From the IMG/VR virus record IMGVR_UViG_3300046517_002304, positions 186,001 to 250,000 of that record: a stretch of DNA of 64,000 nt; one strand, written 5' to 3'. Shown in pieces: positions 2,826 through 46,608 of this stretch (positions within the stretch are counted from its first letter, which is position 1; the number at the start of each line of letters is the position of its first letter). Both the position numbers and the translations under genes were made by a program. Below the pieces are notes generated by a model, which was not told the DNA's origin, did no database searches, and saw nothing but the letters and a program-made list of their open reading frames with translations.

Positions 2826-3731
2826 ATGAAAAAACTACATCTATCCATTGCTTTAGCGTTAATTGCTCTATTCAGCTTTGCATCGCTTGCACCCACTCCG
2901 GTATACGGAAGAAGTACGACAGATAAGCCAGCCGCAACTGCACAGGCTCCCGCTGGAGCTAAGCCTGTAGCTTTAACCGATGATACTGTCATTAAATATT
3001 TGGAAGCGTCTGTGATGATATTAAAAACAGACAATCTACAGCAGGGATGGATGGGAAGTGGTACTGTCTTATATCAAGACATGGATTGGGCATATGTTTT
3101 AACTTGCGCTCATTTATTTGATGATGCAAATCAAAAAGAGTGTGGCATACGATTCTTCTACAAAAATGGAGCGAAGCTTGATAAATCATTAATTTATAAA
3201 GCAGAAATACTTGGAATGAGCCATAAGGAAGATTTATGCTTTATAAGGTTTAAGGCGGACTATGATATTCCTCACTTTAGAATAGCGCCTAGGGATTGGA
3301 CTGCTGATAAAGGTGATTTAATTGTTTCTTGCGGCTTTGACCAGAGAGAAGGGAAGCTAGCAGCCTACAATACGTATTTTGATAAATATGAAGTTTGGAA
3401 TATGGGGCAGTTTAAGTGTGATAAATGCGGGCAAGTCCATTCTTATGAAAAAAGTTTATTTATTATTTCTGCACCAGGATATCGTCATGGTCGTTCTGGA
3501 GGCGGAAGTTTTAGCAAAGAAGGCTATATGATTGGCGTTTGCAGTAGAGGGTCTGAAATTGAGTTCGGCACAGGTAACGGCGGAAGTATTAAGGTGGCAG
3601 ATATTCATGATTATGCCAAGAAGCTAGGATTAGAATTTGTGCTGGATGGCAAAACTAAAACCTTAAGAGAGTCAACCGTCCAAACTAAAAACGGAGAAGT
3701 GCCTGGTTCGGATTATATTCCGGTTCCCTAA
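2826..3731 (+). CDS. Trypsin-like (S1) serine protease with signal peptide
   Basis: GSGTVL..VLTCAHLF (His), EDLCFI (Asp) and GRSGGG (Ser) motifs; N-terminal MKK-hydrophobic-ASLA signal peptide. Confidence 0.9.
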   Translation: MKKLHLSIALALIALFSFASLAPTPVYGRSTTDKPAATAQAPAGAKPVALTDDTVIKYLEASVMILKTDNLQQGWMGSGTVLYQDMDWAYVLTCAHLFDDANQKECGIRFFYKNGAKLDKSLIYKAEILGMSHKEDLCFIRFKADYDIPHFRIAPRDWTADKGDLIVSCGFDQREGKLAAYNTYFDKYEVWNMGQFKCDKCGQVHSYEKSLFIISAPGYRHGRSGGGSFSKEGYMIGVCSRGSEIEFGTGNGGSIKVADIHDYAKKLGLEFVLDGKTKTLRESTVQTKNGEVPGSDYIPVP

Positions 3732-4477
3732 AGAACATTTAAGGGTGAGTTCTGGAAGTAAGAACATAAACTTTTATACTCGCACAATCCGCAATGATCC
3801 CCAACTGTTCCTACAACTGTATCTGGATTGGACTCCATAACTTCGTTGTAAACCTTAAGCAGTTTCTTGGGCACATTCTCTAGTGTTTGTTTACTAAACT
3901 TAGCAGAAATAAGGCTTCCACCTTGCAGATAATAAAGTCCTGCTTTAATCTTACTTGGATCTACATTATACATCTCTGAAACCACCCATGTATAACACAT
4001 TAGTTGTAGGTCATTTACCACCGTCTGCATAGTTTTGCGAAACTTGCCTTCTTTGGTGGTTTTAAAATCTAAAATCCAGTATTCGTCATTTCTCTTAATA
4101 ATCATATCCATAAAGCCGACAACAAATTTATTGTGCGGGGCGTCTAAGTCCTTTTTAAATGGCACTTCAATCTCAGCATCTGTACCTATCTTTTTTGACA
4201 GCACCATGAATTGCTTTAAGTCCTTTGGCAATTGTTGGGCATAATGATACGGCAGTGGATTCTCGGTAGTCATTACTTCTTTTGAAATATCATTAATATT
4301 CATCATACCTTTATGCTTGGTATAAAGTTCAATGACCTTATGAACTATTTTTCCATATCTAAACCAGATTTGTTCGGGAATTGGGCTAGGTGTCTTGAGG
4401 TGATATTTTAACTTGTATTTGTATTTACATTGTTCAATAGTCCCAACTCTGCTGACGCTGATATGTTCTATATTCAT
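3728..4477 (-). CDS. PD-(D/E)XK nuclease, RecB/AddB/Cas4-like, with 4-Cys Fe-S staple
   Basis: Motifs EIEVPF, GFMDMII and ILDFKTT, plus QLMCY. One N-terminal Cys (IEQCKY) and C-terminal HCGLCEYKSLC. Confidence 0.85.
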   Translation of the reverse strand: MNIEHISVSRVGTIEQCKYKYKLKYHLKTPSPIPEQIWFRYGKIVHKVIELYTKHKGMMNINDISKEVMTTENPLPYHYAQQLPKDLKQFMVLSKKIGTDAEIEVPFKKDLDAPHNKFVVGFMDMIIKRNDEYWILDFKTTKEGKFRKTMQTVVNDLQLMCYTWVVSEMYNVDPSKIKAGLYYLQGGSLISAKFSKQTLENVPKKLLKVYNEVMESNPDTVVGTVGDHCGLCEYKSLCSYFQNSPLNVL

Positions 4478-4573: not shown

Positions 4574-5212
4574 ATGAAGATAAAAGAAGTATTTGATTAT
4601 TTAAAGTCATTGAGCCTTCAGAGCGAGCTAGAGTCACGCATTAAGGCATTCCATGCTCTATGCTCACAGCCGGTCACCGGTAGTCCCGCCGAAGGACTCT
4701 TGCATAATGCTCTTGGTGGCGTAGGCGTTAAAACATCGTGGACTCCTATGAGTCATGCACAAGAAAAAGATATGGTTTTTGAAATAGGCGAAAACAAAGT
4801 TAACGTATCCCAAAAAGGATGTAAAGAGAGTCGCACTAGAATATCTTTTAGCAGTTATCGTACGACTTCAGCAGAACTACTGGAACAAAAACTAGACTTA
4901 ATTGAAAAATTAGATGCCAATCTTCACATGATGTTTGTATTCGCAAGAATGCATACCGGCAAAAACCCGCTGCCTGATTACTACAAGATTTATCTTATTA
5001 ATCCTCATTATTTAAATCCAAAAAAATTCAAGTGGAAAGAAGAAAGAGATGCAGACGGCGTGATTAAAGGATTTCATACTTACACGAATGATTTAAATAT
5101 CAATATGGGTATTGTTCAGAAAATGAGCGGACAACTTTGGGTTGATATCGCTAAGTCCAATTTAGAGAAACATCCAGATATGATTCTTGAATTAATGGAA
5201 ATTAAGATTTAA
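4574..5212 (+). CDS. Hypothetical protein, weakly restriction-endonuclease-like
   Basis: 212 aa. KDMVFE..VSQKG could be a D...(Q/E)xK PD-(D/E)XK core; not certain. Confidence 0.3.
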   Translation: MKIKEVFDYLKSLSLQSELESRIKAFHALCSQPVTGSPAEGLLHNALGGVGVKTSWTPMSHAQEKDMVFEIGENKVNVSQKGCKESRTRISFSSYRTTSAELLEQKLDLIEKLDANLHMMFVFARMHTGKNPLPDYYKIYLINPHYLNPKKFKWKEERDADGVIKGFHTYTNDLNINMGIVQKMSGQLWVDIAKSNLEKHPDMILELMEIKI

Positions 5213-6204
5213 TGAAATCTGTTAATCATAATACGTTTGTATCCTGGTTGGAGAAGCACTTCGATGTTATCAAGGAACGAGGTCCACAACTTCAAGTTAA
5301 TTCCTTTTTTCATGAAGATAAAAACTTCAAACTTTATTGTAATACAGACAAGAACTGCTATCATTGTTGGTTGTCTAGTGAGTCCGGATCTCTTTTTAAA
5401 CTTGTGTCTATAGTAGAAAAATGCTCATATAAAGAAGCAATGCAAATTTTGGGGGTTGAATCTGAAATTCATAACCTACATGAAAAAGTCAAAGAGCTAT
5501 ATAAAAAGAAAAAAGAGACTCCTATTGACCAAGTAGTAAAACAAATAGGCTTACCAGATGGCGCTTCTAAAATTTCGGATTTATCTAACGACAACCCTTT
5601 TAAGATAAAAGCCATAAAGTATCTTAGCACCAGAAAGATTGATTGCGGGGATTTGTATATCGGGTGCTTCGGCCCAGCGACAGACCGTATTATTATTCCA
5701 TATTATAACAAGAACGGAGCGCTGCTTTACTGGAATGCCAGAACAATTGTTGGGCATCCGCAGAAATACATGTTCCCGCTTAATGACGGAACAGGCAAAG
5801 GAGATTTTCTTTATTTCCCCGTTCATAAAAACGAAAGCAAGATTTATATTACAGAAGGTGAGTTTAACGCAATTACACTTTCGCAGATGGGATTTTTTTC
5901 GGCGTCAACTGGCGGAAAACAAGCGACAGAAAAGCAAATAAGACTACTGAAAAATTATGATGTAGTGGTTTGTTACGATAATGATAAGCCTGGCCGTATC
6001 GGCACATGTAAGGTCGCGAAAGAGCTGATATCAGATAGATTCGGCAGGCAAGTAAACTATGTGCTTCCGCCTAAAGATGTCAACGACTGGAATGATATGC
6101 TGAAGGACGGCAATCTAGAATTAGTTAAAAATTATATTTTATCTAATGAAAAAAGATTTAGCGAGGGGTACTTCAAAGTAGATTACTATATGGATTTTTG
6201 TTAG
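5212..6204 (+). CDS. DNA primase (DnaG/TOPRIM type)
   Basis: N-terminal zinc-ribbon-like region (FFHED...CYHCW), RIIIPYY..G.LLYWNAR, and TOPRIM motifs IYITEGEFNA, CYDNDKPG and DWND. Confidence 0.9.
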   Translation: MKSVNHNTFVSWLEKHFDVIKERGPQLQVNSFFHEDKNFKLYCNTDKNCYHCWLSSESGSLFKLVSIVEKCSYKEAMQILGVESEIHNLHEKVKELYKKKKETPIDQVVKQIGLPDGASKISDLSNDNPFKIKAIKYLSTRKIDCGDLYIGCFGPATDRIIIPYYNKNGALLYWNARTIVGHPQKYMFPLNDGTGKGDFLYFPVHKNESKIYITEGEFNAITLSQMGFFSASTGGKQATEKQIRLLKNYDVVVCYDNDKPGRIGTCKVAKELISDRFGRQVNYVLPPKDVNDWNDMLKDGNLELVKNYILSNEKRFSEGYFKVDYYMDFC

Positions 6205-6737
6205 ATCTTCTTTAATCCGTCAAGAAAATTAAAGAGCGGTTCATCGGTATAATCCCAAAAGCCAGAATTGGGCACGCCTTCAATTGATTCAAAATATCTC
6301 ATTGTTTGTTCACTTAGAATGTATGCCCATGCTGTTTCAACCGTAGCAGGATCAGTATAAGCATGTACTAGCTTGCGTACATGGTAATTAAAGCTTCCTC
6401 TACCGTAAAACGACTTTAGTTTATCTAAAAGCAAAATAGCATCAGGATTGGTTATGGTTAACATGTAACCGACTACTATATCTTTGCCGGATACTTTAAT
6501 TAAAGAGTAACTATTGGGGGTATACGAAATTACGCCTAATTTGCCGAATATAAATGCTGGCTTTATATCATAAGAGAAATCTGATAGCTCAGTTTTAAAA
6601 AGACGTGTCCCAGGTTTTAATTCACATGCTAAAAAAAATCTATTAATTTTTCGTATTTGTTTCTCGCCGCTTGACTTTCCGAGACTAAATCTGTTATTGT
6701 TCAAATCAGTTCTCCTGGTACTATGATATTTAATCAT
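6201..6737 (-). CDS. Gamma-glutamylcyclotransferase/AIG2-like fold protein (degenerate)
   Basis: FFLACELKPG in place of FVYGTLKxG; VVGYMLTI..AILLLDKL and YHVRKLV..ETAWAYI match the GGCT pattern. Confidence 0.55.
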   Translation of the reverse strand: MIKYHSTRRTDLNNNRFSLGKSSGEKQIRKINRFFLACELKPGTRLFKTELSDFSYDIKPAFIFGKLGVISYTPNSYSLIKVSGKDIVVGYMLTITNPDAILLLDKLKSFYGRGSFNYHVRKLVHAYTDPATVETAWAYILSEQTMRYFESIEGVPNSGFWDYTDEPLFNFLDGLKKI

Positions 6738-7023
6738 GAACCTGAACTATTTTGTTAACAAAATTTGTACCATCCTTACAGTATCAGTAAATTTAGACAA
6801 TCTATCTAAAATGCAAGTCGCAAATATCTTTACTGGAATAGTTGAAGATGTGAGCGATTATGGTGTTTTAATGCGAGCAATGAATGGAAAAAAGTCATTA
6901 TTTTTCCGCGATCACATCGTTGGAATATTAGAAGAAGAAGTAGTGCAAAAGCAGGAAATACCTAAGCCTGTACCACAACCGCTGTCCATTGACTCCTTAA
7001 ACGATATGCTTCTTAAACGTTAA
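6736..7023 (+). CDS. Small hypothetical protein, possible Sm/Hfq-like fold
   Basis: FTGIVEDVSDYGVLM...KKSLFFRDHIVGI resembles the Sm1/Sm2 strand pattern. Confidence 0.35.
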   Translation: MNLNYFVNKICTILTVSVNLDNLSKMQVANIFTGIVEDVSDYGVLMRAMNGKKSLFFRDHIVGILEEEVVQKQEIPKPVPQPLSIDSLNDMLLKR

Positions 7024-7267
7024 GATTTTCTGGTGGAGCGTACTCGCCAAACTTCTTAATGTTTAGTAAACACATGTCAAACTTAGAGCAAAGTGAATCA
7101 AAGTATTCAAAGTATAGCTTTTCAAATTCTTTAACTTCTGTTTCTTTGATGTCAAAGTAAACCGTTCGGCCCTTCTTGCCCACAAATTTATATCCGTGCA
7201 TATTGAGCCATGCGGCAATACCTAAATCGGATATTTGTTTTCTAACTTGCTTTTCTGTATCTGTCAT
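7013..7267 (-). CDS. Small hypothetical phage protein
   Basis: 84 aa, immediately downstream of the actin-like gene on the same strand. Confidence 0.55.
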   Translation of the reverse strand: MTDTEKQVRKQISDLGIAAWLNMHGYKFVGKKGRTVYFDIKETEVKEFEKLYFEYFDSLCSKFDMCLLNIKKFGEYAPPENLNV

Positions 7268-7282
7268 TTTCTTTCTTTCTCT

Positions 7283-8293
7283 TTATAAAACACTATTTTC
7301 GGCAGCAATTAAAGCGCCCTTGGCAACAGTAAGTAAGGTGTCTTTAGGCTTTTTAATCGCCCCAATGTTCATTGGAACCTTGTTCTCAATTAAAATTTCC
7401 TTAAACCAATCTTCAAAACCGTTAGGCGAACTAGTTCCACCGCTAAGCACAATATCAACTGGTTCATCCATGTTAAATTTACCATTGTTATCAGCAATTC
7501 CCTTTTTAATTCCGGCCACTGTCTTTTCTATCATAATACGATATTGCGTCATGATAGACCTTTCCACACTAGTTGTAGGCGACTTGGTTAAGTCAATTTT
7601 TGTCTTTTCTCTGTTAATAACGATTGGGCTTTCATTTGTTGCCTTGGCAGACATTTCGTCAATCCAGTCGCCAGAATTTGATATAGAGAAGCTAAAGACA
7701 GGCGTCCCATATACCGCATAACAAACATTGGACATTCCGGCACCATGACTACTGGCTAGACCAGTAAACTTCTTATCTTCTAATTCAGCAAATATAATGC
7801 AAAGCGCCTCATTAACGGCCTGTGGAAGAACCACTTTGTTGTTAACATTATATTTCTTAAAAATTGAATCTAGTATCTTCTGATGGTAATCGGCATCGGA
7901 AAAAGAATTAACGGCGTTGGCCGGAACAGTATAGGCTAAGGTGGCCTTATCTTCATTTACCTCGCCGATAAGACGATGCAACATTGCGCCTAATATAAAA
8001 AATGCTTCTTTTTCCTTAGGGTTAAGACATCCGCCTTGCATTGGTCGCTTTAACTGAATCTCGCTCATAGAATAGGCTAAGTTTAAGCTAGCCTCCCCGA
8101 TTGCAAAGGCAACTTTTTCCTTCTCAATCAGAGGAACCCCTGACTTCTTTAACATATTAAACATATACCTGTTATTAAGCGGTAATTCTACGAATGCGTT
8201 AATATCTTTGGTATACTCAATTTCATTATTTGCATTTCTCTTTGCGCAAACTAACGTGTAAGTTCCAACATCTAGTCCAATACAATTATTCAT
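7283..8293 (-). CDS. Actin-like ATPase (ParM/MreB/Alp superfamily)
   Basis: Phosphate-1 IGLDVGT, connect-1 VNEALC, phosphate-2 SHGAGMSN, adenosine VLSGGTS and connect-2 VAKGALIAA; 336 aa. Confidence 0.85.
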   Translation of the reverse strand: MNNCIGLDVGTYTLVCAKRNANNEIEYTKDINAFVELPLNNRYMFNMLKKSGVPLIEKEKVAFAIGEASLNLAYSMSEIQLKRPMQGGCLNPKEKEAFFILGAMLHRLIGEVNEDKATLAYTVPANAVNSFSDADYHQKILDSIFKKYNVNNKVVLPQAVNEALCIIFAELEDKKFTGLASSHGAGMSNVCYAVYGTPVFSFSISNSGDWIDEMSAKATNESPIVINREKTKIDLTKSPTTSVERSIMTQYRIMIEKTVAGIKKGIADNNGKFNMDEPVDIVLSGGTSSPNGFEDWFKEILIENKVPMNIGAIKKPKDTLLTVAKGALIAAENSVL

Positions 8294-8298
8294 TCAAT

Positions 8299-8493
8299 TC
8301 ATTCCTTCTTTAATTCTACAACTTTGCCTATTTCAATATCTGGAATCTCTAAGTCCCAAGGGACTTCTTTATTCTCAACATTGATGCCAATTTTTCCATC
8401 TTGATCTAGCGTAATTGTAAGATTAAGGTTTATTGTTATTTCGCCTTGCTGCGTCTTAGTGATTACGCTAACTGGTTTGGTTAAATGTGCCAT
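8299..8493 (-). CDS. Small hypothetical protein upstream of the actin-like gene
   Basis: 64 aa on the same strand, 5-nt gap. Confidence 0.5.
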   Translation of the reverse strand: MAHLTKPVSVITKTQQGEITINLNLTITLDQDGKIGINVENKEVPWDLEIPDIEIGKVVELKKE

Positions 8494-8496
8494 ATT

Positions 8497-8673
8497 TCAA
8501 TATAGTAAAAAGTTATTTTTTTTATAGAGTTCTTCAAATAAGACATCTATAAACACTAACTTATTAATGTCATTGTCTCCATCTAGGCTTGAGAAAAGAG
8601 ACTTTAATCCTTCTTCTGTTTGTTTTAACTTTTCCACATCCGAAATGATACCTTTATCTGAATTAGCTGCCAT
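8497..8673 (-). CDS. Possible 58-aa ORF below the track cut-off
   Basis: Hand translation: MAANSDKGIISDVEKLKQTEEGLKSLFSSLDGDNDINKLVFIDVLFEELYKKNNFLLY*. Ends 3 nt before the next minus-strand gene. Confidence 0.35.
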   Translation of the reverse strand: MAANSDKGIISDVEKLKQTEEGLKSLFSSLDGDNDINKLVFIDVLFEELYKKNNFLLY

Positions 8674-8938
8674 TAAAAATAACTATTGCCTTTGCTATAA
8701 GGGGTTTAATCAAGATATTGTTGTTCAAATGAAGTCTCTGAGACATTTAATTGAACAAAAGTATACAAGCATTAACCTTTTTCTTTGTTGTAGAGATGAA
8801 TTACTTTATTTATTAGGCGAAAATGATAAAAATATATGTATATCCAACTATACTAAGGAGAGGTATGCGTATACCCACGAGCTATCTGAGGTGCCAAAAG
8901 GCGAAAATCCCGTAAATATTTTTAGGAAAGATATATGA
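8645..8938 (+). CDS. Hypothetical protein, weak resemblance to a GT9 N-terminal segment
   Basis: Likely start MIPLSE at 8645 rather than 8567. QDIVVQMKSLRHLIEQKYTSINLFLCC resembles a GT9 strand/helix. Its end overlaps the next ORF start by 4 nt (ATGA). Confidence 0.4.
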   Translation: MIPLSELAAIKNNYCLCYKGFNQDIVVQMKSLRHLIEQKYTSINLFLCCRDELLYLLGENDKNICISNYTKERYAYTHELSEVPKGENPVNIFRKDI

Positions 8939-9498
8939 GTAAATTTAAAGTTAATCTTCGTCAAGGTCGTGCAGGGCGCTTAGATACAAGCGCGGTAGCC
9001 GGAGTTAGTTTTCAAAGAACCGTTCACATTTCTGGACCAGATGGAGTTAATAAAGAGTATGTAGATGGACAAGTATTTGAAGAATCTAATTTTTACAAGT
9101 GTTATTGCCTTCCTGCCTGTAAACCAGAAGATGCTAAGCTACAAATATTAGAAGATGATGGTAGAGAATATGCCCCAAACAGCAAGCATCCTGTTATTTT
9201 TACTAAAGTAATTAATGCACACTCTAACTGTTTGCCAGAGTATACTATTGACGCCAAAAGAGATTGTCATGGAACTATCGTAGCGGCCCAAATCACTAAT
9301 CGTTGCGCAACTGGGTCTGGCGAAGACATAAACGTAAAATTTAACAAGAGCAACAGCGCCATTCTTGAGATTATGGCCGGAGAAACACAAACGTTTGGAA
9401 AAGATGATTTTAATATATCCAATATCGATTTTATTAATAATACTGATCATAACATTAAAATGCAGGTATTAATTTCTGTTGTCTCTGATTTTAAGTAA
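8935..9498 (+). CDS. Hypothetical protein
   Basis: 187-aa ORF translationally coupled to both neighbours. Confidence 0.6.
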   Translation: MSKFKVNLRQGRAGRLDTSAVAGVSFQRTVHISGPDGVNKEYVDGQVFEESNFYKCYCLPACKPEDAKLQILEDDGREYAPNSKHPVIFTKVINAHSNCLPEYTIDAKRDCHGTIVAAQITNRCATGSGEDINVKFNKSNSAILEIMAGETQTFGKDDFNISNIDFINNTDHNIKMQVLISVVSDFK

Positions 9499-10274
9499 TG
9501 AAGAATCAAATCTCTATTAAAGAGTTTAATGATAAGAAAGACAAAATTCTTATCATTCGTGATGAGGGTCACTTTGGCGATATCTTGATGCATAGAATGT
9601 TATTTGAAGATATAAAAGCCTTAATCCCAGATTCCCATATAACTTTTGCCTGCCCGAAAAGATATCATGATGCAGCAATGAATCATCCTTATATCGATAA
9701 TCTTATGGACTCTGGTAAAGTGAATGTTGGCGATTTTTTATATGTCTACAACACCGCCAACTCTTGTGAAGAACAGAACCATCATCAACATAAAAGTGAC
9801 ACATGGGCAGAGAAACTAGGTATCAAGTTAGCGAATCATCATATGCACCTTCATGTGGACGCTAGCCATACCGATTCTTCTTTGCCATTATTAATTTTAG
9901 CTCCATTTGCGTCGGATAAAAAGCGTAGTCTAAGTGCTTCACAAGCCAATGATATTATTCAACATTTTGATGGTAAGTACGACATACGGCTAGTACACAA
10001 TTGTTTAGTAGAAGGATTATGTAAAGATGGAATTATTTTTGATACATTCATTCATTTAGCAGAATTAGTGGCGAGTGCTTCGCTGGTGGTTTCTGTAGAT
10101 ACATCTATACTACACCTTGCTGGAGGACTAAATAAAAACACTATCGGATTATTCAGTTGGACATCAGGAAAAATTATGTGCCAGTATTATCCTACGGTTA
10201 AATATATCCAGCACAAATCGCTTAATCTTTCAGATGATTTTGACATCGGCCGCCTAATAGAGATGGCTAAATAA
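9498..10274 (+). CDS. Glycosyltransferase family 9 (heptosyltransferase-like)
   Basis: GHFGDILM...ITFAC N-terminus and LVVSVDTSILHLAGGLNKNTIGLFS C-terminal GT9 signature. Confidence 0.85.
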   Translation: MKNQISIKEFNDKKDKILIIRDEGHFGDILMHRMLFEDIKALIPDSHITFACPKRYHDAAMNHPYIDNLMDSGKVNVGDFLYVYNTANSCEEQNHHQHKSDTWAEKLGIKLANHHMHLHVDASHTDSSLPLLILAPFASDKKRSLSASQANDIIQHFDGKYDIRLVHNCLVEGLCKDGIIFDTFIHLAELVASASLVVSVDTSILHLAGGLNKNTIGLFSWTSGKIMCQYYPTVKYIQHKSLNLSDDFDIGRLIEMAK

Positions 10275-11097
10275 AGAATTCACTCACGTTACTAATGTTA
10301 GAAATATTATCGTATTTCCATCCGTTTGAGCAATCGCCGATCTTAATTTCGGGGTTTTCTCTTTTCATAAAGAAGGCCATTGTATCTACTATTTCCTGAC
10401 TAATCTTGTGTTGCGGATAAGAATACATGTTGTTTTCTAGTTTTTCAGATCCAGGTCTTTCATCGGCAAATGCATTATCGCAAGATAGCAAAAGTATATT
10501 TGATGACTGAAAAAAATTAGCTATATTTAAAGCAGCACATAAAGGACTTCTGTAATCGTCAATTCTAAATCCAGTTGTGTTATTGAACATAGAAAACTTA
10601 CTCTCGTAGGTAGGATAATACTTATACATTATCCCTTTATATTTTTTAACAAATTCCGAACTAGTTCTTGACGCAACAATGCATGGAGGGAAGTATTTAT
10701 TTTTAGGCAGGAAGGAACAACATTCTTGATATGGATTGTTGACTAAATAAAAATCCATCTTCCCTAATGATGCATTCCATTTTTTTAAAGCTCCGTTAAT
10801 ACCAATTACGATATACGGACCCTTTATTTGTTTTAATATGCTCTGAGCATTTAGAAAATTAAGTCCGTCAGATACGATAACACAATTTTTGTATTTATTC
10901 TTAATTTCGTTAACAGCCATTAAATTTAATGGTCTGATATATGTTTCATTATCAATGAATAATTTGTAGTCTTTTTCAGATGTTAGATTATTAATATCTA
11001 TCGGGTGTAAGCGTATACTAGAGTTTCTTACCCATATGTTATGCTCTGTTAAAGCATACTCGTTATTTTTATACTTTTTAATACGCTTGATTGCCAT
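10267..11097 (-). CDS. DUF115/MAF/sialyltransferase-like Rossmann GT-related protein
   Basis: KNCVIVSDGLN..IVIGINGA..DFYLVN, then ALNIA..ILLLSCD; pattern of the DUF115/GT29-like clan. Confidence 0.55.
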   Translation of the reverse strand: MAIKRIKKYKNNEYALTEHNIWVRNSSIRLHPIDINNLTSEKDYKLFIDNETYIRPLNLMAVNEIKNKYKNCVIVSDGLNFLNAQSILKQIKGPYIVIGINGALKKWNASLGKMDFYLVNNPYQECCSFLPKNKYFPPCIVASRTSSEFVKKYKGIMYKYYPTYESKFSMFNNTTGFRIDDYRSPLCAALNIANFFQSSNILLLSCDNAFADERPGSEKLENNMYSYPQHKISQEIVDTMAFFMKRENPEIKIGDCSNGWKYDNISNISNVSEFFI

Positions 11098-11118: not shown

Positions 11119-13041
11119 CTACTTTCCGCAAGGAACAAAGTAGAAACAATCCGGCTCATTGCCGTTTTCCGTCATAATTTTCTTCATGTCAAGATGGACG
11201 CTAATATTTACGTCTAATGGCTTAACCTCAATCATTGGTTTATTATCTGGCAGAATTAGTGAAATAAACGCTGGCAAGTCATGCTTCAAGGTAATGAAAT
11301 CTGGACAACCGGTAATTTTGATTTCACTAATCATTTTGCTAGAATCAATGGAAATAACATCTGGTATGCCAGGGTTTTCTATTTTAATCAAACTTGGAAT
11401 ATCATGTTCAATTTTGATTACTCTTGGCACATCATCAGCAATTAAGCGAATATCTTTTATTTCCGGAGCGATTACTCTGATTTCTTTAGGAACATTGCTG
11501 GCATCTATCGATATAGATGGAATAGAAGGAACAACTACATTAATCGTATCTTTGAAGTTGTGCTTCAATGCGATGTATTGAGGAATATTTGCAGGAACAA
11601 TCTTAATTTCAGATGGGATACCAGCAAAGTTATACTCAACATTTGGCGATTCCTCAGTTTCTTCAAAGCCTAAGTCTTCTACGTATGTTTGCTGCCACGC
11701 GGCCACTGATGCGGCACCTGGGCAGGTGATAGAACAAGCGCAGCTAATTACTGGAGGAGTACCCCAGTCTACTGATACTGTTGGCGGATCTCCGAAATTT
11801 ACATTAGGGAAATCAGGAACCATAAATTGAACAGCAGGAAATTGAACCGGACCAAATTGTACGATTGGGAAAAACGGCTGAGCAAATTGTATCGTTGGAA
11901 AGTTTGGGAGCGGACCAAAATTAATTGTAGCAGGTATACCCGGATTATTAATTACAATTACAGATGGTATGGCTGGATTTGTAAAAGAAATAATAGGTGG
12001 CGTAATTGAAATATGAGTAGGAATACTCGGTCCACTAATAATGATTGTATCTGGAATGCTAATTCCAGATAATGTTATTACACTTGGAATACTTCCATGA
12101 ATGTCTATGACGCTTGGAATATTTCCGTGAACATCTATTATACTGGGTATATTAAATGAGCTAATTCCGCTAATTCCTAATGTTAGACATGGAAAGTTAA
12201 TAGGGATTATCGGTAAATCAAAATCTGTAGATGCTATACTAACATTAATGCCAGGAAATGGACTAATAACAGGCACTCCAACGACAATGCCTCCCCCGCC
12301 GCTATTAACCACTGGTTCATTTGAACTTGTTCTCCGAATAGCTGTTTGGGTTATTGTACAATTGCCGTTCGTCACGGTGACTACGGGGTCAATATTGCCA
12401 TTGGGGGCATATGTATGTGTTCCGGGCTGAGTAGATGTTGTTTGGAAGCCGTCGCCAAACTGCAATAAAAAAGTTTGTATGGTGCCTGTTATATCAACAG
12501 TATAGCTCATTACCGTGCCGCTGGCAGGGTCAGAACTAAGAAATTCAATAGTTAAGACAACCGTAGGGCAACCAGAATCGTCAAATATCGGCGGTGTATT
12601 TTGTAGATTTCTAATGCGCCAATCTAAGGTAGACGTATCAGGACTAAAATTTTCACCTACGAAATCTTCGATATCAATAATTGCATCGGCAAGTTGCTTA
12701 TGATGTTCTGCAATTACGAATCCTCTAACTGAAGTTCCAGATGCATTAAACCTTGTATGATCTCCCCCGAAGTTTCTTAAACATCTTTTAAATTTAAATA
12801 TTTTACCATTTACGTCTTTTTCTACTAGATCATAATAAAACAGTTCGCCAGATATGTTTGCAAAACCGTTTTCAGCCCATATCTCATCAGCGTCAATGCC
12901 AACTGGAACAATCGTAATTTCTTCGCTCCATGCTTGATTATCGCCAACGGTTATAGATTCTGATGTGTTGTAAACAGCATAAAGAGTGCTGTCATTGTCA
13001 ATTGCGTTAGGATATACTGGTTGTGGAGGAAATCCTCTCAT
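11119..13041 (-). CDS. Virion fibre-like protein: shared N-terminal domain, PKD/Ig-like domain and Ile/Pro-rich repeats
   Basis: PKD-like LQFGDG..HTYAPNG..VTVT; N-terminal domain shared with the two upstream ORFs; IPxxI repeats. Confidence 0.65.
   Translation of the reverse strand: MRGFPPQPVYPNAIDNDSTLYAVYNTSESITVGDNQAWSEEITIVPVGIDADEIWAENGFANISGELFYYDLVEKDVNGKIFKFKRCLRNFGGDHTRFNASGTSVRGFVIAEHHKQLADAIIDIEDFVGENFSPDTSTLDWRIRNLQNTPPIFDDSGCPTVVLTIEFLSSDPASGTVMSYTVDITGTIQTFLLQFGDGFQTTSTQPGTHTYAPNGNIDPVVTVTNGNCTITQTAIRRTSSNEPVVNSGGGGIVVGVPVISPFPGINVSIASTDFDLPIIPINFPCLTLGISGISSFNIPSIIDVHGNIPSVIDIHGSIPSVITLSGISIPDTIIISGPSIPTHISITPPIISFTNPAIPSVIVINNPGIPATINFGPLPNFPTIQFAQPFFPIVQFGPVQFPAVQFMVPDFPNVNFGDPPTVSVDWGTPPVISCACSITCPGAASVAAWQQTYVEDLGFEETEESPNVEYNFAGIPSEIKIVPANIPQYIALKHNFKDTINVVVPSIPSISIDASNVPKEIRVIAPEIKDIRLIADDVPRVIKIEHDIPSLIKIENPGIPDVISIDSSKMISEIKITGCPDFITLKHDLPAFISLILPDNKPMIEVKPLDVNISVHLDMKKIMTENGNEPDCFYFVPCGK
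11250..12150 (-). repeat. Degenerate 10-11 aa IPxxIxI / FPxxxF protein repeats in two blocks
   Basis: IPSIIDVHGN-IPSVIDIHGS-IPSVITLSG..., FPTIQF/FPIVQF/FPAVQF/FPNVNF, and IPSEIKIV/IPQYIAL/VPKEIRV/VPRVIKI/IPSLIKI/IPDVISI. Confidence 0.75.
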
Positions 13042-13042
13042 A

Positions 13043-15286
13043 TTAATAAACTCCTAAAACCCATTGTTCTCCAGCAGGTCTTGCCGGAAGTGAGCTAAAC
13101 GTTGCCGATGATGCATTGAACTTAATAAATGTATTCACCGAATAATCAAAAGATATATACGCTAAATGATTGCCATCTGATGTAGCCAGTAGTTTTTGTG
13201 ATGGGTCGTCAAACGACATGTTCGCCATACCAGGTATAGTTGGATCTTGATAAGCTACAACAGACGAGTCATAAAGAGCAGACCAAGCCATTGAGTTAAT
13301 GCCAGGCCCGCCGACCGACCATGTGGCTGATGTGGGATTATATGCTAGGACTTCGCCTGTATTATTAAAGAAATATAAACCACCGATTAAGGGGACTAGT
13401 TGACCTTCTAGTTTCGTAGAACCCGGCATATCGTTTAGTTTTTGTATCCCTTGAACTAAATCAGAAAGAACGCCCTGTGTTTGATAAAAGCTTTTAATTC
13501 TAAAATAAGTGCCGTTTGCATCATTTCTAGCAATAAACCCAGTTGAGTTAAACCACGCCGATCTGTATACGCTAAAATCTCCGCTCGCACCGCTGTCTAC
13601 ATTGTTCATTAATTCAACTGCGCCGTTAGTGTAGCTACTTGGCGTAAAGACTGTTGTAGCGGTACTTAAGTCTACCAGACTCATGTTTGTATTGTCTTGA
13701 TTGGTAGATGACGAAACATCTGGCATTGCGTCAGTATTGCCTAGCAAAAAGTAAACTGATTGCGGGGAATTAAGAGATACCCAATTCCAGGCGCGCGAAA
13801 AACTACCACTTAGCGCTGCATTGCAGCTACCGCCTGTATAACAATCGCTAAATCCTTCGTATTCTGTTACATCAATTGTTTGATCAGTCCAACTGCCAGA
13901 CGATACATTATATCCAGTTGCCCAATAGAAATAGGCAGTACCTCTATCTCCTGAATCTGTTGTATCTTTAGCAACAAAGCCAGAATTTCTAAGAAACTCT
14001 TTTTTTTGTTGATTTTCCTGAGGTTCACCAGTCAAAAAGCTGTAGTCTCTAGTTATATTTGGGGAAGCGTTTCTATTATTAGTTTTAAAAACGCTGCCTA
14101 AGGTGTTAAATTCATATGTATTGGCGGTTTTTGTGGCCTGATAGGTTGTGTCCGGGAAAACGGCAAACCATAAATTAGTATCTTCTATAACATCAATAGC
14201 ATCTGGAACTATTGTAGTTCTGTATGCCCCAAATGATGTGTTAACCCTAATTCTTACGTCATATAAACCGCCAGTACTATAGAGCGCTTGGGTTTGAGCA
14301 GAATTAAAATGCTGCAAGTCATCCCCTAGTTTCCAAATATATTGTAATACAGGATCTTCTGGTCTTTCCCCATTATCGGTTACTTCTATGTTTACTAAGG
14401 TGTTTATTTTTGATTTTAAGACGCCTCCGGTGGCCATAGACACGTCCGGCTCAAAAACCTGATTAGTAGGGGATATGTCAAAGAAATCCATTTCTGCGGG
14501 GTCTGGGGCCTGTGCCCTAGCGTTAATCATCTTTTCAAATACTAACTCATCAGTTCCAAAGGCATTGCTAACGGTTAGGCTTACATTATAAAAGGCAGGA
14601 GTGTAATATGTTTTTTCTATTGTTTTGCCGTCAAGATCCACAACGCATGATACTCCACTTGGCACAAACTCAGATACAGATGGTATTCCAGCAGAAACAG
14701 AGACTGATCCGCCATCCCCGAAACACCACTTCCAGTAAGTTGGACTTCTGAAACTAAGATCATCAAAAGTGATTGTTAATGGGACTACGCCAACTTGTTT
14801 ATTTGCAGTAAACCATGCTTTTGGCTGAAGGACAAGGTTCTGCAAAAAATTAGTTCTACCCTCTAATGTATCCCCTAAAGGATTTAGGTCTGTAGTTCCT
14901 TTTACTCCAGCAAAATTCTCAATAGCTATAATAGCATTTTTTATACTGCCGTGATGTTCGGCCATTACGTTTTCTGTGACATTTGTTGACAACTTAGACT
15001 TAGTGGCGTCTGTAAATCCTGGTAAAATCTCTAATTCTGAAAACGTATCGCTAGTAACGACGCCATAGTAAAACGAGACAGCCCTTAGGTCAATTTCGCT
15101 ACATTGATCAGTCAATGTAATAATTCCAGTCGGTGGAAATCGCGATGTATCACCACTAACGGTAATAGATGTATCGCCTGGACTATAGTCTTCAGATAAA
15201 GAAACACGAAGCGAATCGTGTACTAAAAATAGATTATTATCAGTATCTAAGACAGATGGATATAATGATGAACTAGGAATTGTCAT
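13043..15286 (-). CDS. PKD-domain virion protein (fibre/receptor-binding candidate)
   Basis: PKD motifs WKWCFGDG..KTYYTPAFYNVSLTVSN and WKLGDD..YSTGGLYDVRIRV; propeller-like C-terminus. Confidence 0.7.
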   Translation of the reverse strand: MTIPSSSLYPSVLDTDNNLFLVHDSLRVSLSEDYSPGDTSITVSGDTSRFPPTGIITLTDQCSEIDLRAVSFYYGVVTSDTFSELEILPGFTDATKSKLSTNVTENVMAEHHGSIKNAIIAIENFAGVKGTTDLNPLGDTLEGRTNFLQNLVLQPKAWFTANKQVGVVPLTITFDDLSFRSPTYWKWCFGDGGSVSVSAGIPSVSEFVPSGVSCVVDLDGKTIEKTYYTPAFYNVSLTVSNAFGTDELVFEKMINARAQAPDPAEMDFFDISPTNQVFEPDVSMATGGVLKSKINTLVNIEVTDNGERPEDPVLQYIWKLGDDLQHFNSAQTQALYSTGGLYDVRIRVNTSFGAYRTTIVPDAIDVIEDTNLWFAVFPDTTYQATKTANTYEFNTLGSVFKTNNRNASPNITRDYSFLTGEPQENQQKKEFLRNSGFVAKDTTDSGDRGTAYFYWATGYNVSSGSWTDQTIDVTEYEGFSDCYTGGSCNAALSGSFSRAWNWVSLNSPQSVYFLLGNTDAMPDVSSSTNQDNTNMSLVDLSTATTVFTPSSYTNGAVELMNNVDSGASGDFSVYRSAWFNSTGFIARNDANGTYFRIKSFYQTQGVLSDLVQGIQKLNDMPGSTKLEGQLVPLIGGLYFFNNTGEVLAYNPTSATWSVGGPGINSMAWSALYDSSVVAYQDPTIPGMANMSFDDPSQKLLATSDGNHLAYISFDYSVNTFIKFNASSATFSSLPARPAGEQWVLGVY

Positions 15287-16251
15287 TGTATGATGATTTT
15301 GTCGCCTAAACTGAGCTTCTTCTTAGTTCCGTCAGTGAATACAACTAATAAGGATGGTTGATAGGAGCCTGCTACGGTATATATGTGAGTTGCGGTATGA
15401 ACGTCTGGATCAGATGCGGTAAAGAATGTTCCGTCGTCAAAAATCCAATATCTACTTGCTATATCCCCATCTGTTTGATCGATAAAGGTTATATTTGTGG
15501 TATTTGCAATACCAATTACCGGTGTGACATAAAAAAAGGCTTGTGCCTGGTTATTGTTTACGGTAATATAAGATTTCTTTGTTATTATACCTTGAGCACC
15601 CAATGATGTTGTCATGCTCAACTGAACCGTATAAGTCCCTATACTAGCGTAAGTATGCATTGGGCTTACTTCAACGCTCGTATTTCCGTCCCCGAAATCC
15701 CATAGAAAACTTACGGCATTTCCACTAGAAAAGTTTTGAAATGATACTTCTAGTGGCGCTGGTCCTGACGCTGGAAATGCTCTGAACAGAGGAGCAGGTG
15801 CCAACCATCTACTTTCTTGTTTCTTCAAAATGCCATTTAACGATGCATCGGTTGGCTTGTCGCTTACCCCTATATTCGCCTCAATGTTAATAATGGCGTC
15901 TTTTTCGGCATTGTGAACTTCTGCAAAAACACAGCCAAGAACTGGAGTGTTTTTGGGCCATGGTCCTTGTCTAGAGCCAGAAAAGCCTCTTGCCAACTCT
16001 TTAAACGTAGTATCCGTTCTACTTGCATAATAAACAGTTTCTTCCCCCACTTTTATAAGTCCAGAAGAAGGGAATGAAGACGCATCTTGAACAACGATAA
16101 ACTTAGTAGTATAACTAATGCCCTGAGTGGTTACTGTAGATGCATTGTTAGCCACTTGGTAGAGTGTATCCTCTGAATCCAATGCTTTAGGGTAAATACT
16201 TAAATCTCCGGCTATGTATCCGGAATCTAGTGAACTAATTCGGCTTGTCAT
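15283..16251 (-). CDS. PKD-domain virion protein (two PKD domains)
   Basis: FLWDFGDGNTS..PMHTY..GTYTVQL and YWIFDDG..HIYTVAGSYQPSL. Confidence 0.8.
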   Translation of the reverse strand: MTSRISSLDSGYIAGDLSIYPKALDSEDTLYQVANNASTVTTQGISYTTKFIVVQDASSFPSSGLIKVGEETVYYASRTDTTFKELARGFSGSRQGPWPKNTPVLGCVFAEVHNAEKDAIINIEANIGVSDKPTDASLNGILKKQESRWLAPAPLFRAFPASGPAPLEVSFQNFSSGNAVSFLWDFGDGNTSVEVSPMHTYASIGTYTVQLSMTTSLGAQGIITKKSYITVNNNQAQAFFYVTPVIGIANTTNITFIDQTDGDIASRYWIFDDGTFFTASDPDVHTATHIYTVAGSYQPSLLVVFTDGTKKKLSLGDKIIIQ

Positions 16252-17479: not shown

Positions 17480-17939
17480 GATTATACAAAGTAGCATTTC
17501 TTGGGATAGTTATTTTTTAAACATAGTTAATGACATCGGAAAGAAAAGCAAAGATCCTAGTACTAAAATCGGGTGCTTGATAGTTGATAAGGAAAACCGC
17601 ATTAAGGCAACCGGATACAATGGATTTCCGTCTAAGGTCATTGACTACGAAGAAAGATATACTGACAGAAATCAAAAATTATATTTTACAGAACATGCAG
17701 AAAAAAACGCTATTTTTTATGCTGCCCGCCTTGGAATTTCTGTGGTTGGCTGCAAGATATTCATACCCCTTCATCCTTGTCACGAGTGCTGCCGTGGGAT
17801 TATACAATCTGGTATAGATGAAGTGATTTTTACTAACGACAATTCTAATGGGTATTATGATAGGTGGCGAGAAAGTATCGCATACGCAGATATAATGTTT
17901 GAAGAAGCCGGTATTTTATTAAGAAAGATTGATGTATGA
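17472..17939 (+). CDS. dCMP deaminase
   Basis: KSKDPSTKIGC, TGYNGFP, HAEKNAI and PCHECCRGI zinc motifs. Likely start MNKIIQ at 17472, overlapping the NDT stop. Confidence 0.92.
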   Translation: MNKIIQSSISWDSYFLNIVNDIGKKSKDPSTKIGCLIVDKENRIKATGYNGFPSKVIDYEERYTDRNQKLYFTEHAEKNAIFYAARLGISVVGCKIFIPLHPCHECCRGIIQSGIDEVIFTNDNSNGYYDRWRESIAYADIMFEEAGILLRKIDV

Positions 17940-18910
17940 AGAACATTAGTTTAGATCTAATTAGAGTTTGTGAAGCAGCCGCTATAGAAGCAGGCAAGCT
18001 TGTTGGCAGTGGAGATAAACTAGAAATTGACCGAGTCGCCACAGACGCTATGCGCAAGAGGTTAAATGAAATACGGTTCGCCGCCAAGGTAGTGGTTAGT
18101 GAAGGAAAGAAGGACGGAGCAGCGCATCTAGAGGGCGAATATGTTGGCTTGCTAGGACGACAGTTCGCCGAAAATTCTTCTGCTGCTAGTGTATCCGAAT
18201 ATAAAAATATACAAGACAGTAAGCCTAATACTTATGAAATCGCACTGGATTCAGTTGATGGCACCACTCCCACATCAATTAATGGAGCTGAAGCAATGAG
18301 CGTCTTAGCAGTTGCTAATGAAGATTGCATGTATGTTCCTCAAAACTTCTACATGAATAAACTGGCTTATGGTGCAAAAATACGGTCAAAAGTAAGGTTG
18401 AATATCTTAGATCCTATTGAGAGAAATGTTGAGCTATCCGCTTTTGCATTAGATAAAAAAATTAATAATCTAATGGTTGGGTTGTTAAACCGCCAAAGGC
18501 ATAATGACATAATAACAAGATTAAGAAAGATGGGAGTTAGACTAAAGCTTCTACAAGATTGTGATGTGTCTGGATGTATAGGAACATGTTTGCCAGAAAG
18601 TGATATTGATTTATTTTTTGGATTCGGTGGAGCGCCTGAATCCATCATAGCAACCGCGGCGATTAAATCCCTCAGAGGAGGATTTCAATCATATGAAGTA
18701 GACAGTAATTTTAAGCAATCTGGTGATGTGATGGACGAGAATGCTTTAATTAGAGGAGATTGTGTTTTTGTAGCTACAGGTGTTCTTAACGGCTCAATGC
18801 TCCGTGGCGTAAGATTTACAGAAGATGGATGTATAACTAACTCGGTATTCATGAGAAGTAAATCCGGAACAATTCGTTGGCTAACGACGCACCATAATCA
18901 CGAAATCTAG
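17936..18910 (+). CDS. glpX: Class II fructose-1,6-bisphosphatase
   Basis: RVCEAAA, DAMRKRL, VVSEG, IALDSVDGT, GGAPE and FVATGV..G.ML.GVRF. Confidence 0.9.
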   Translation: MKNISLDLIRVCEAAAIEAGKLVGSGDKLEIDRVATDAMRKRLNEIRFAAKVVVSEGKKDGAAHLEGEYVGLLGRQFAENSSAASVSEYKNIQDSKPNTYEIALDSVDGTTPTSINGAEAMSVLAVANEDCMYVPQNFYMNKLAYGAKIRSKVRLNILDPIERNVELSAFALDKKINNLMVGLLNRQRHNDIITRLRKMGVRLKLLQDCDVSGCIGTCLPESDIDLFFGFGGAPESIIATAAIKSLRGGFQSYEVDSNFKQSGDVMDENALIRGDCVFVATGVLNGSMLRGVRFTEDGCITNSVFMRSKSGTIRWLTTHHNHEI

Positions 18911-46550: not shown

Positions 46551-46554
46551 GATA

Positions 46555-46560
46555 TATTTA
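46555..46560 (-). promoter_or_regulatory. Late-promoter-like TAAATA
   Basis: 4 nt before ATG 46550. Confidence 0.6.
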
Positions 46561-46561
46561 G

Positions 46562-46589
46562 TTGCATTTTTTTGTTTTTATGATATAAT
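46562..46589 (+). promoter_or_regulatory. Sigma70-type promoter for rtcB
   Basis: TTGCAT-N16-TATAAT with an extended TGn; GGAG at 46598-46601; ATG at 46609. Confidence 0.65.
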
Positions 46590-46608
46590 GCACGGTTGGA
46601 GAAAAATC

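What the first reader, a model, noticed from the sequence alone, without database searches (positions are those of the whole stretch)
7013..8673. Actin-like ATPase in a compact operon with two to three small proteins
Seen: all five actin-fold motifs, with phosphate-2 DxG replaced by SHG. It is flanked on the same strand by 84-aa, 64-aa and possibly 58-aa ORFs. Known: nucleus-forming jumbo phages use tubulin PhuZ, whereas actin-like filaments are described for plasmids (ParM/AlfA) and prophage CGP3 (AlpC), usually with small adaptors. Inference: an actin-based system for positioning genomes or capsids in a large lytic phage.
Basis: partly seen in the sequence, partly recalled or inferred. Interest (0 to 1): 0.6.

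Follow-up and report, generated by a model that had tools for sequence, protein, structure and literature searches.

The report
Huge-phage actin gene with two partners
A 511-kb phage carries its own actin-type (volactin-family) gene locked between two small conserved partner genes, a three-gene set shared by many huge phages that probably builds filaments inside the infected cell, though its cargo is unknown.

Summary
Window 7283..8293 (-) encodes a 336-aa actin-fold protein. It matches Pfam Volactin end to end (195 bits, cut-off 35). Its AlphaFold model (pLDDT 89.9) lies closest to the filament formers MamK, BeeR, MreB, crenactin and actin (Z 24-29); no Hsp70 or sugar kinase appears in the top 50 rows.

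The phosphate-2 Ser is real and family-wide: 90/90 viral homologues and about 142/150 distant cluster representatives have it. Only the His is private to this window.

The genome is a 511-kb virus record with terminal repeats, tail and baseplate genes, and no match to tubulin or tyrosine-integrase models.

Two flanking small genes are true partners:
- The 64-aa family lies on the same strand in 82 related loci, 73 of them within 150 nt upstream.
- The 84-aa family lies on the same strand in 84 loci, usually as one ~150-aa protein made of two such domains.
- Both are under purifying selection, and the trio persists down to 42% actin identity.

The 58-aa ORF is a real gene but arrived by a local inversion.

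No centromere-like repeats or basic DNA-binding adaptor were found, so a ParMRC-like genome mover is not supported. Glycosyltransferase and virion genes recur next door. Polymerisation, partner binding and cargo remain inferred. I found no description in the searchable literature.

The parts
7283..8293 (-). Actin-fold ATPase of the Pfam Volactin family, 336 aa. Phosphate-2 reads S-H-G-A-G-M.
   Evidence: Pfam PF25216, 195 bits, full length. AF2 model pLDDT 89.9, pTM 0.88. VIA Z: MamK 28.6, BeeR 27.2, MreB about 25.5, crenactin 25.9, actin about 24. dN/dS 0.02-0.10 among relatives.
8299..8493 (-). 64-aa upstream partner (s64 family). It has a conserved N-terminal beta-rich unit, a variable linker (very short here) and a C-terminal W-x-IPD-[FI]...K...FGK-type peptide.
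   Evidence: Alignment A2. Profile hits in 82 related loci, all on the actin strand, 73 of them within 150 nt upstream. dN/dS 0.09-0.40. No Pfam, PHROG, NCBIfam or Atlas match. Stop is 5 nt before the actin ATG.
7013..7267 (-). 84-aa downstream partner (s84 family), a single beta-alpha-beta-beta-alpha-alpha domain. In most relatives two such domains are fused into one ~150-aa protein.
   Evidence: Profile hits in 84 loci, all on the same strand, 66 of 83 within 150 nt downstream. 81 loci carry the two-domain form. AF2 model pLDDT 89.3. dN/dS 0.00-0.02. Weak DUF5659 likeness. No solved-structure match.
8497..8673 (-). 58-aa ORF. It is co-directional and abuts the 64-aa gene in this lineage only, and is not a conserved partner of the actin gene.
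   Evidence: The family is found in 63 loci, always on the opposite strand to the actin gene and divergent from the p123 gene. It overlaps the 5' end of the opposite-strand ORF 8567..8938.
8645..10274 (+). Block of three genes inverted relative to the relatives: p123 (likely start 8645), p187 (8935..9498) and a GT9-like glycosyltransferase (9498..10274). In relatives the block lies upstream of, and co-directional with, the actin module.
   Evidence: tblastn synteny in 44-71 loci. Glyco_transf_9 at 30.2 bits, cut-off 22. Glycosyltransferases also lie beside distant family members.
6736..7023 (+). 95-aa convergent neighbour (p95). It is conserved in position in 44 loci. Function unknown.

Best explanation
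The phage encodes its own actin-type filament protein together with two dedicated accessory proteins. The three act as one module that builds a filament or scaffold inside the infected cell.

Shown:
- The 336-aa protein belongs to the Volactin family. Its model is closest to solved filament formers.
- The module (64-aa family, actin, 84-aa family) keeps its order and strand in about 80 related huge-phage loci and in a relative with only 42% actin identity.
- All three genes are under purifying selection. The 84-aa family is as constrained as the actin itself.

Inferred:
- The protein polymerises with nucleotide, as H. volcanii volactin does in vivo.
- The upstream protein is a two-ended adaptor or regulator. 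Its C-terminal aromatic/acidic peptide, set behind a flexible linker, docks on the actin.
- The downstream domain works as a dimer, because it is a fused tandem pair in most relatives. It may cap, bundle or link the filament to its cargo.
- With Ser in place of the phosphate-2 Asp but the connect-1 Glu (E162) kept, hydrolysis may be slow or gated by a partner.

The cargo is not identified. The nearest recurring neighbours are glycosyltransferase and virion (PKD, baseplate) genes on one side and a primase on the other. I therefore favour a role in organising late events such as assembly sites or envelope-linked steps, rather than ParM-style DNA pushing.
For: - Family and fold. Volactin forms dynamic filaments in vivo (PMC10869688).
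- Motif kinship with volactin: FTG..G.xFGAG and GGTSSP.
- Distribution: 206 matches in IMG/VR, many on contigs of 223-532 kb. LR756511 (595 kb) carries the trio as well.
- Trio synteny and strand. Tight spacing of 3, 5 and 15 nt.
- Selection.
- Trio in a 42%-identity relative.
- Fused two-domain partner.
- Inteins sit in two conserved motifs of the gene in several lineages, as is typical of important, highly conserved phage genes (my own knowledge).
- No match to the Pfam tubulin model in the genome.
Against: - No experiment or expression data.
- The complex prediction for actin plus the 64-aa protein gave no verdict.
- The phosphate-2 Asp, whose mutation stops filament dynamics or assembly in ParM, AlfA, Alp7A and AlpC (PMC5539076), is Ser here. 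No Ser-type member has been characterised.
- Conserved gene order in a clade of related phages can reflect shared descent rather than function.
- The window's own 64-aa copy is the most divergent of its family.
- Relatives at 30-39% identity lack both partners.
Confidence: 0.55

Rival explanations
1. A ParMRC/AlpAC-like DNA mover. The filament, through a small adaptor bound to a phage DNA site, positions or separates replicating phage genomes.
For: - The layout (actin-like gene with small co-directional genes) resembles parMR and alpAC (PMC5539076).
- A primase and a nuclease lie just beyond the module.
- Distant cellular family members carry an N-terminal ParB-type HTH fused to the actin domain (P0246 at 27.8 bits, over the cut-off; three more just under it). 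DNA linkage therefore exists somewhere in the family.
Against: - There is no iterated repeat array beside the module in the window. Only 8 of 89 loci have any array nearby, and none is conserved.
- Neither partner matches an RHH, HTH or any other DNA-binding family.
- Family pI medians are 6.3 and 5.1, so neither is basic.
- No ParM/StbA match was reported for the actin.
- ParB_N genes of the genome lie far away.
Confidence: 0.15
2. An envelope- or glycan-linked scaffold. The filament organises phage glycosyltransferases or host envelope synthesis, in an MreB-like or volactin-like cell-shape role. It might enlarge or reshape the cell, or place virion-glycosylation enzymes.
For: - Glycosyltransferase genes recur next to family members at several depths of divergence: the GT9-like 9498..10274 and MptE-like 10267..11097 here, GT9-like in L094, GT4 in L096, GT9 plus GT1/4 in L100, and GT9-like copies after the L002 gene.
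- One cellular member is fused to Wzz/GNVR/BY-kinase polysaccharide co-polymerase domains (P0262).
- Volactin itself acts in cell-shape transition.
- In L100 the upstream small protein starts with a hydrophobic helix and ends in a KFG peptide.
Against: - The protein starts only 4 residues before the first strand, so it has no N-terminal amphipathic helix of the MreB kind (sequence).
- It has no significant MreB family match (18.8 bits against a cut-off of 515).
- Adjacency may be inherited gene order.
- No partner in the window has a predicted membrane segment (sequences).
Confidence: 0.2
3. A non-polymerising actin-fold ATPase (chaperone- or kinase-like) that only resembles cytoskeletal actins.
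For: - The phosphate-2 Asp-to-Ser and Thr-to-Met changes depart from the canonical nucleotide site.
- BFVD viral look-alikes are mostly Hsp70 homologues, at low TM of 0.5-0.6.
Against: - The top 50 solved-structure matches are all MamK, BeeR, MreB, crenactin, actin or Arp, aligned over 280-317 residues.
- There is no Hsp70 substrate-binding domain.
- Pfam assigns the protein to Volactin at 195 bits, against 13.6 bits for Actin, and nothing else scores at E below 0.1.
Confidence: 0.1

Closest known systems
Volactin (VolA, HVO_2015) of Haloferax volcanii; Pfam PF25216
   Same: Same Pfam family, matched full length at 195 bits. The motif wording is shared, FTG..G.xFGAG and GGTSSP. Size is about 330 aa. 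Volactin forms dynamic cytoplasmic filaments.
   Different: Volactin has D-F-G-A-G-T in phosphate-2, whereas this protein and nearly all of its closer relatives have S-x-G-x-G-M. Volactin is a chromosomal cell-shape factor of an archaeon; this gene sits in a huge phage with two private partner genes. Cellular relatives score 240-380 bits on the model, so the phage branch is the divergent one.
ParMRC, AlfAB and AlpAC (plasmid and prophage actin-like segregation systems)
   Same: An actin-fold NTPase encoded beside small co-directional accessory genes on a mobile element.
   Different: There is no centromere-like repeat array, no recognisable DNA-binding adaptor, and no ParM-family match. There are two partners, one on each side. 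The host element is a lytic-looking 511-kb phage, not a plasmid or prophage.
MamK, MreB and BeeR (bacterial actin filaments)
   Same: These are the nearest solved structures: Z 28.6, 25-26 and 27.2, with 281-303 residues aligned.
   Different: Identity is only 14-18%. Family models score far below their cut-offs (MreBH 18.8 against 515; MamK 17.1 against 400). There is no N-terminal membrane helix.
PhuZ tubulin of nucleus-forming jumbo phages
   Same: It is a phage-encoded cytoskeletal protein in very large phages, so it is a functional analogue by inference only.
   Different: It has a different fold (tubulin). This genome has no match to the Pfam tubulin model.
DUF5659 (PF18903) small phage proteins, compared with the 84-aa partner
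   Same: Similar size and predicted fold (Atlas structure TM 0.65-0.71, feature score 0.86-0.88). Two of 30 family members hit the Pfam model at 8.5e-4.
   Different: The window's copy does not hit the model. DUF5659 has no known function, and I found no paper on it.

Membership tests
Pfam PF25216 Volactin | Score over the curated gathering cut-off (35 bits) along the whole model | tested here: met
   195 bits, E 2.9e-57, residues 5-331 on profile 3-321/321. Confirmed on the genome copy.
Pfam PF25216 Volactin | Actin (ASKHA) fold with phosphate-1, connect-1, phosphate-2, adenosine and connect-2 motifs | tested here: met
   Motifs are conserved in A1. AF2 model pLDDT 89.9. Z 24-29 to actin-family filaments.
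Pfam PF25216 Volactin | Phosphate-2 D-x-G as in the characterised H. volcanii protein | tested here: not met
   Ser in the window and in 90/90 viral homologues. Volactin reads D-F-G-A-G-T (Suppl. Fig. 8b of PMC10869688). Most family representatives near this protein also have Ser, so this is a subfamily trait and does not exclude it from the Pfam family.
Pfam PF25216 Volactin | Dynamic filaments in vivo and a role in cell shape | not testable with these tools
   Needs expression, imaging or polymerisation assays.
Type II (ParMRC-like) partition system | Actin-like NTPase of the ParM/StbA family | tested here: not met
   It is an actin-fold protein, but only Volactin (and Actin at 13.6 bits) appear at E below 0.1.
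Type II (ParMRC-like) partition system | Adjacent small DNA-binding adaptor (ParR, AlfB or AlpA type) | tested here: inconclusive
   Small partners exist. They match no DNA-binding family and are neutral to acidic. DNA binding itself was not assayed.
Type II (ParMRC-like) partition system | Centromere-like iterated repeats next to the operon | tested here: not met
   No array in window 6500-9600. TRF finds arrays near the module in only 8 of 89 loci, mostly coding repeats, and none is conserved.
MreB | Family model over its cut-off | tested here: not met
   NCBIfam MreBH scores 18.8 bits against a cut-off of 515. Pfam MreB_Mbl was not reported for the window protein.
AlpC/AlpA of prophage CGP3 | Sequence kinship with AlpC and an AlpA-like adaptor binding upstream alpS sites | not tested
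   No AlpC or AlpA sequence was available from a tool. The comparison rests on the description in PMC5539076.
DUF5659 (PF18903), for the 84-aa partner | Match to the family model | tested here: inconclusive
   The window copy has no hit at E below 0.1. Two of 30 relatives hit at 8.5e-4. Atlas feature and structure neighbours are DUF5659 clusters, scoring below the level the tool calls reliable.

The most novel reading that the evidence does not exclude
Huge phages that lack PhuZ tubulin run a cytoskeleton of their own, based on a Ser-type volactin-family actin. It comes with a private two-protein control set: a tail-peptide adaptor upstream and a dimeric alpha/beta partner downstream. The partners gate nucleotide hydrolysis and tie the filament to a cargo. 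This would be a second, independent kind of phage cytoskeleton, widespread in environmental huge phages.
Probability: 0.3. Interest if true: 0.85.

Novelty: new variant of a known kind. Interest (0 to 1): 0.66.

Why it matters
Phage-made cytoskeletons are known mainly from PhuZ tubulin in nucleus-forming jumbo phages, and from ParM- or AlpC-like proteins on plasmids and prophages.

This is an actin of a different family. It is fixed in a large clade of huge phages: 206 IMG/VR contigs, with genomes up to about 600 kb. It keeps two co-conserved partner proteins that resemble no known adaptor.

If it polymerises, it offers a new and compact three-gene system for studying how very large phages organise the infected cell. 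It would also be the first handle on the Ser-type branch of the volactin family, which includes uncharacterised bacterial chromosomal operons.

The three genes are small and could be tested by heterologous expression without a cultured host.

Tried and rejected
- Complex prediction, actin plus 64-aa protein: score 0.18 against a mark of 0.32, so no verdict. It counts neither for nor against binding. The actin/84-aa pair could not be tried because the cap is one job.
No reads were laid and no other route was tried.
- PDB sequence search with the actin: no relative.
- PHROGs: no hit for any of the nine local proteins except a weak one for the GT9-like gene.
- NCBIfam: only far sub-threshold MreBH and MamK hits.
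- 84-aa model: Foldseek and VIA-wide give best Z 5.4 and nothing convincing.
- 64-aa protein in the Atlas: no usable hit.
- First genome-contig scan with the single protein: blank.
- 'Relatives' search: not available for a virus record.
- Centromere hunt by the repeat finder, promoter scan and TRF: nothing conserved.
- Idea that the Ser is phage-specific: rejected, because cellular members have it too.
- Idea that the 58-aa ORF belongs to the module: rejected.
- Idea that the family is cellular with phage pick-ups among the near relatives: rejected for the subfamily above 50% identity. The seven MAG hits carry the same phage synteny and come from unrelated phyla.
- The careful tree did not finish; only the quick tree was used.
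- A phylogeny against MreB, MamK, ParM and volactin was not built, because no tool gave me those reference sequences.
- The Pfam LidA_Long_CC hits to the two-domain partner (28/30, best 8e-8) remain unexplained and were not used.
Full report
**What is at the coordinates.** The minus strand of window 7013-8673 holds four closely packed ORFs:
- 8497..8673, 58 aa
- 8299..8493, 64 aa
- 7283..8293, 336 aa
- 7013..7267, 84 aa

The spacers between them are 3, 5 and 15 nt, and an AAGGAA lies upstream of the 336-aa start. The window is bases 186001-250000 of a 511,233-bp IMG/VR virus record with direct terminal repeats. The surrounding genes include:
- a DnaG-type primase (5212..6204)
- a PD-(D/E)XK nuclease (3728..4477)
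- a GT9-like glycosyltransferase (9498..10274) and an MptE-like protein (10267..11097)
- PKD-domain proteins
- baseplate proteins (Phage_base_V, Tail_P2_I)

The genome gives no match to the tyrosine-integrase or tubulin Pfam models. It is therefore a very large tailed phage and looks virulent.

**The actin-like protein.** The 336-aa product matches Pfam PF25216 Volactin from end to end (E 2.9e-57, 195 bits, cut-off 35). The next family is Actin at 13.6 bits. PHROGs and PDB sequences give nothing. NCBIfam gives only far sub-threshold MreBH and MamK hits.

An AlphaFold2 model built on 23 homologues is confident (pLDDT 89.9, pTM 0.88). Its nearest solved structures are all filament formers:
- MamK, Z 28.6
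- BeeR, Z 27.2
- crenactin, Z 25.9
- MreB, Z about 25-26
- eukaryotic actin, Z about 24

No Hsp70 or sugar kinase appears in the first 50 rows.

The motifs are conserved:
- D8-x-G10-T11
- N161-E162
- S182-x-G184-x-G186-M187
- G285-G286-T-S-S-P
- G326

**The SHG motif.** H. volcanii volactin reads D-F-G-A-G-T at phosphate-2 and T-G-G-T-S-S-P at the adenosine motif (Suppl. Fig. 8b of PMC10869688). The phage protein shares that wording except for two changes, Asp to Ser and Thr to Met.
- Ser occurs in 90 of 90 viral homologues I could align, including those at about 30% identity.
- Ser occurs in about 142 of the best 150 cluster representatives from an exhaustive search; only one has Asp.
- Some of those representatives are bacterial. 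One example is a 908-aa Planctomycetota protein on contigs up to 405 kb.

So the Ser is a trait of a large branch of the family, not of this gene or of phages alone. Only the His is private to the window.

In ParM and AlfA, mutating what I take to be this Asp (ParM D170) freezes filament dynamics. In Alp7A and AlpC the equivalent mutation prevents filaments (PMC5539076). The assignment of ParM D170 to phosphate-2 is from my own knowledge. The connect-1 Glu (E162) is invariant here. Slow or partner-gated hydrolysis is therefore a reasonable inference, but nothing more.

**Who else has it.** The word search gave 1111 homologues. One is at 89% identity, one at 63%, and then there is a plateau at 54-59%. 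A profile scan of IMG/VR confirmed 206 viral contigs, many of 223-532 kb.

In 185,579 species genomes only seven hits appeared. They came from MAGs labelled as unrelated phyla: Chloracidobacterium, Acidimicrobiaceae, Nitrosotalea, Neisseriaceae and others. The longer ones, those not cut off close to the actin gene, carry the same phage gene order, so they are phage contigs in bins.

In GenBank phages only two records match, both uncultured huge phages: LR756511 (595 kb, 48.7%) and LR745208 (485 kb, 31%). BFVD holds no close viral model; the best TM is about 0.6, including Bacillus phage G gp506.

In a quick tree the window groups with L093, then with L006/L089, near LR756511, on a long branch inside the family.

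**The partners.**

*Downstream, 84-aa family.*
- A profile finds it in 84 loci, always on the actin strand, and 66 of 83 lie within 150 nt.
- In 81 loci it is one ~150-aa protein built of two tandem copies of the domain.
- The single-domain form occurs in the window, its 89% and 63% relatives, L053, LR756511 and the 42% relative L094. The fusion suggests that the single form acts as a dimer.
- Its model (pLDDT 89.3) is beta-alpha-beta-beta-alpha-alpha. It has no convincing solved relative.
- Atlas neighbours and two weak Pfam hits point to the uncharacterised phage family DUF5659.
- dN/dS is 0.00-0.02, as low as or lower than the actin's 0.02-0.10.

*Upstream, 64-aa family.*
- It is found in 82 loci, all on the same strand, and 73 lie within 150 nt.
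- It has a conserved N-terminal beta-rich unit, a variable low-complexity linker, and a conserved C-terminal W-x-IPDF-x4-K-x-FGK peptide.
- dN/dS is 0.09-0.40.
- The window's copy is the shortest and most divergent. It keeps W46, P51, D52 and the lysines.
- This architecture is typical of a tail peptide that docks on a partner. That it docks on the actin is my inference.
- In more distant loci the upstream small protein has no detectable similarity to the s64 family. It still ends in similar short motifs: ELFDFF in L101, and KFG after an N-terminal hydrophobic helix in L100.

The full trio is present in L094, where the actin is only 42% identical. At 30-39% identity both partners are undetectable.

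**The 58-aa ORF.** Iterative search finds its family in 63 loci, so it is a gene. In every relative it is on the opposite strand, 2.5-3 kb upstream, and divergent from the p123 gene. In the window the whole block (58-aa gene, p123, p187, GT9-like gene) is inverted. This places the 58-aa gene head-to-tail with the 64-aa gene. The 89% relative shows the same layout. It may be co-transcribed here, but it is not part of the conserved module.

**What it probably does.** Volactin forms dynamic filaments that span the cytoplasm. The fold, the family and the tight co-conservation with two partners argue for a filament system with its own regulators or adaptors.

The ParMRC-like reading is weak:
- There is no repeat array by the module.
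- No DNA-binding family matches either partner.
- The partners are neutral to acidic.

It is not excluded, because some distant cellular members carry a ParB-type HTH fused to the actin domain. These sit in chromosomal operons beside a second, short volactin gene.

An envelope or glycan link has more local support:
- Glycosyltransferase genes sit beside family members at several depths of divergence.
- One cellular member is fused to Wzz/BY-kinase domains.
- Virion PKD and baseplate genes are close by.

Shared descent of gene order could explain part of this. I therefore commit to a phage-made actin filament with two dedicated partners that organises the infected cell, at about 0.55. The cargo is open, and I place late assembly or envelope-linked roles ahead of DNA pushing.

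**Novelty.** The full-text library gave nothing on a volactin- or MreB-like gene in huge phages. Known phage actin-likes are AlpC of CGP3, proteins of two Bacillus pumilus phages, ParM-type genes of plasmid prophages, and the giant-virus viractins. The library lacks most subscription journals, so the absence is provisional.

The protein is a member of a known Pfam family. What is new is the three-gene module, its spread in huge phages, and the partners.

**Limits.**
- There are no expression data.
- There is no verdict on binding.
- There is no rooted phylogeny with reference actins.
- The host is unknown.

Noticed in passing
L007:4995-7133 and L009:2061-4175; also representatives P0121, P0128, P0130, P0136, P0159, P0180, P0184, P0194, P0223, P0234, P0245, P0260, P0265, P0266: The actin gene carries in-frame inteins at two different conserved sites. 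In L007 the ORF is 712 aa. The insert starts C-L-C-P-G-T and ends H-N, followed by Cys, and it lies between S and C of the phosphate-2 S-C-G-A-G-M. In L009 the ORF is 704 aa and the insert ends H-N just before S-G-D-W-I-D. At least 14 of the 150 best representatives show the same split match.
   Followed up: partly
window 8497-10274: The block of 58-aa gene, p123, p187 and GT9-like gene is inverted relative to about 60 related loci. L089 shows a partial version of the same rearrangement.
   Followed up: yes
L097:3860-7676 and L099:2206-5196: Bacterial chromosomal operons hold two volactin-family genes in tandem. One is short (about 336 aa). The other is long (654-891 aa) with an N-terminal ParB-type HTH. 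An unknown 324-403-aa gene precedes them. Another member (P0262, 1160 aa) is fused to Wzz, GNVR and BY-kinase domains. Others carry an N-terminal zinc ribbon (P0233, P0218).
   Followed up: partly
L004-L007 (genome contigs): Contigs with full phage synteny (primase, GT9-like gene, actin trio) are binned in MAGs labelled Chloracidobacterium, Acidimicrobiaceae, Nitrosotalea and Neisseriaceae. These are probably phage contigs mis-binned, so they give no host signal.
   Followed up: partly
alignment A3 (two-domain partner), e.g. L012:7027-7473: 28 of 30 members hit Pfam LidA_Long_CC (best E 8.2e-8) over the second domain. I have no explanation for this.
   Followed up: no
window 17936-18910 and 46549-47985: The phage carries a glpX-type fructose-1,6-bisphosphatase (266 bits) and an RtcB RNA ligase (258 bits).
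   Followed up: no
window 11119-13041: A 640-aa protein with long runs of short IP-x-x-I-type repeats and a weak PKD hit sits beside two PKD-rich proteins (13043..16251). Similar coding repeats appear at the edges of many related loci in the TRF output.
   Followed up: no
L094:6583-6894: A ribosomal protein S21 gene lies three genes downstream of the actin trio in a 42%-identity relative.
   Followed up: no
G000:C1:443772-443948 and 301483-301623 (L103, L104): Two ParB_N-domain proteins (394 and 386 aa frames) are encoded elsewhere in the genome, more than 100 kb from the actin module.
   Followed up: no
window 8567-8673: The 58-aa ORF overlaps the 5' part of the opposite-strand ORF 8567..8938. 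Homologues of that ORF align only from its residue 25-28 onwards, so its true start is probably the ATG at 8645. That would still overlap the 58-aa start by 29 nt.
   Followed up: partly
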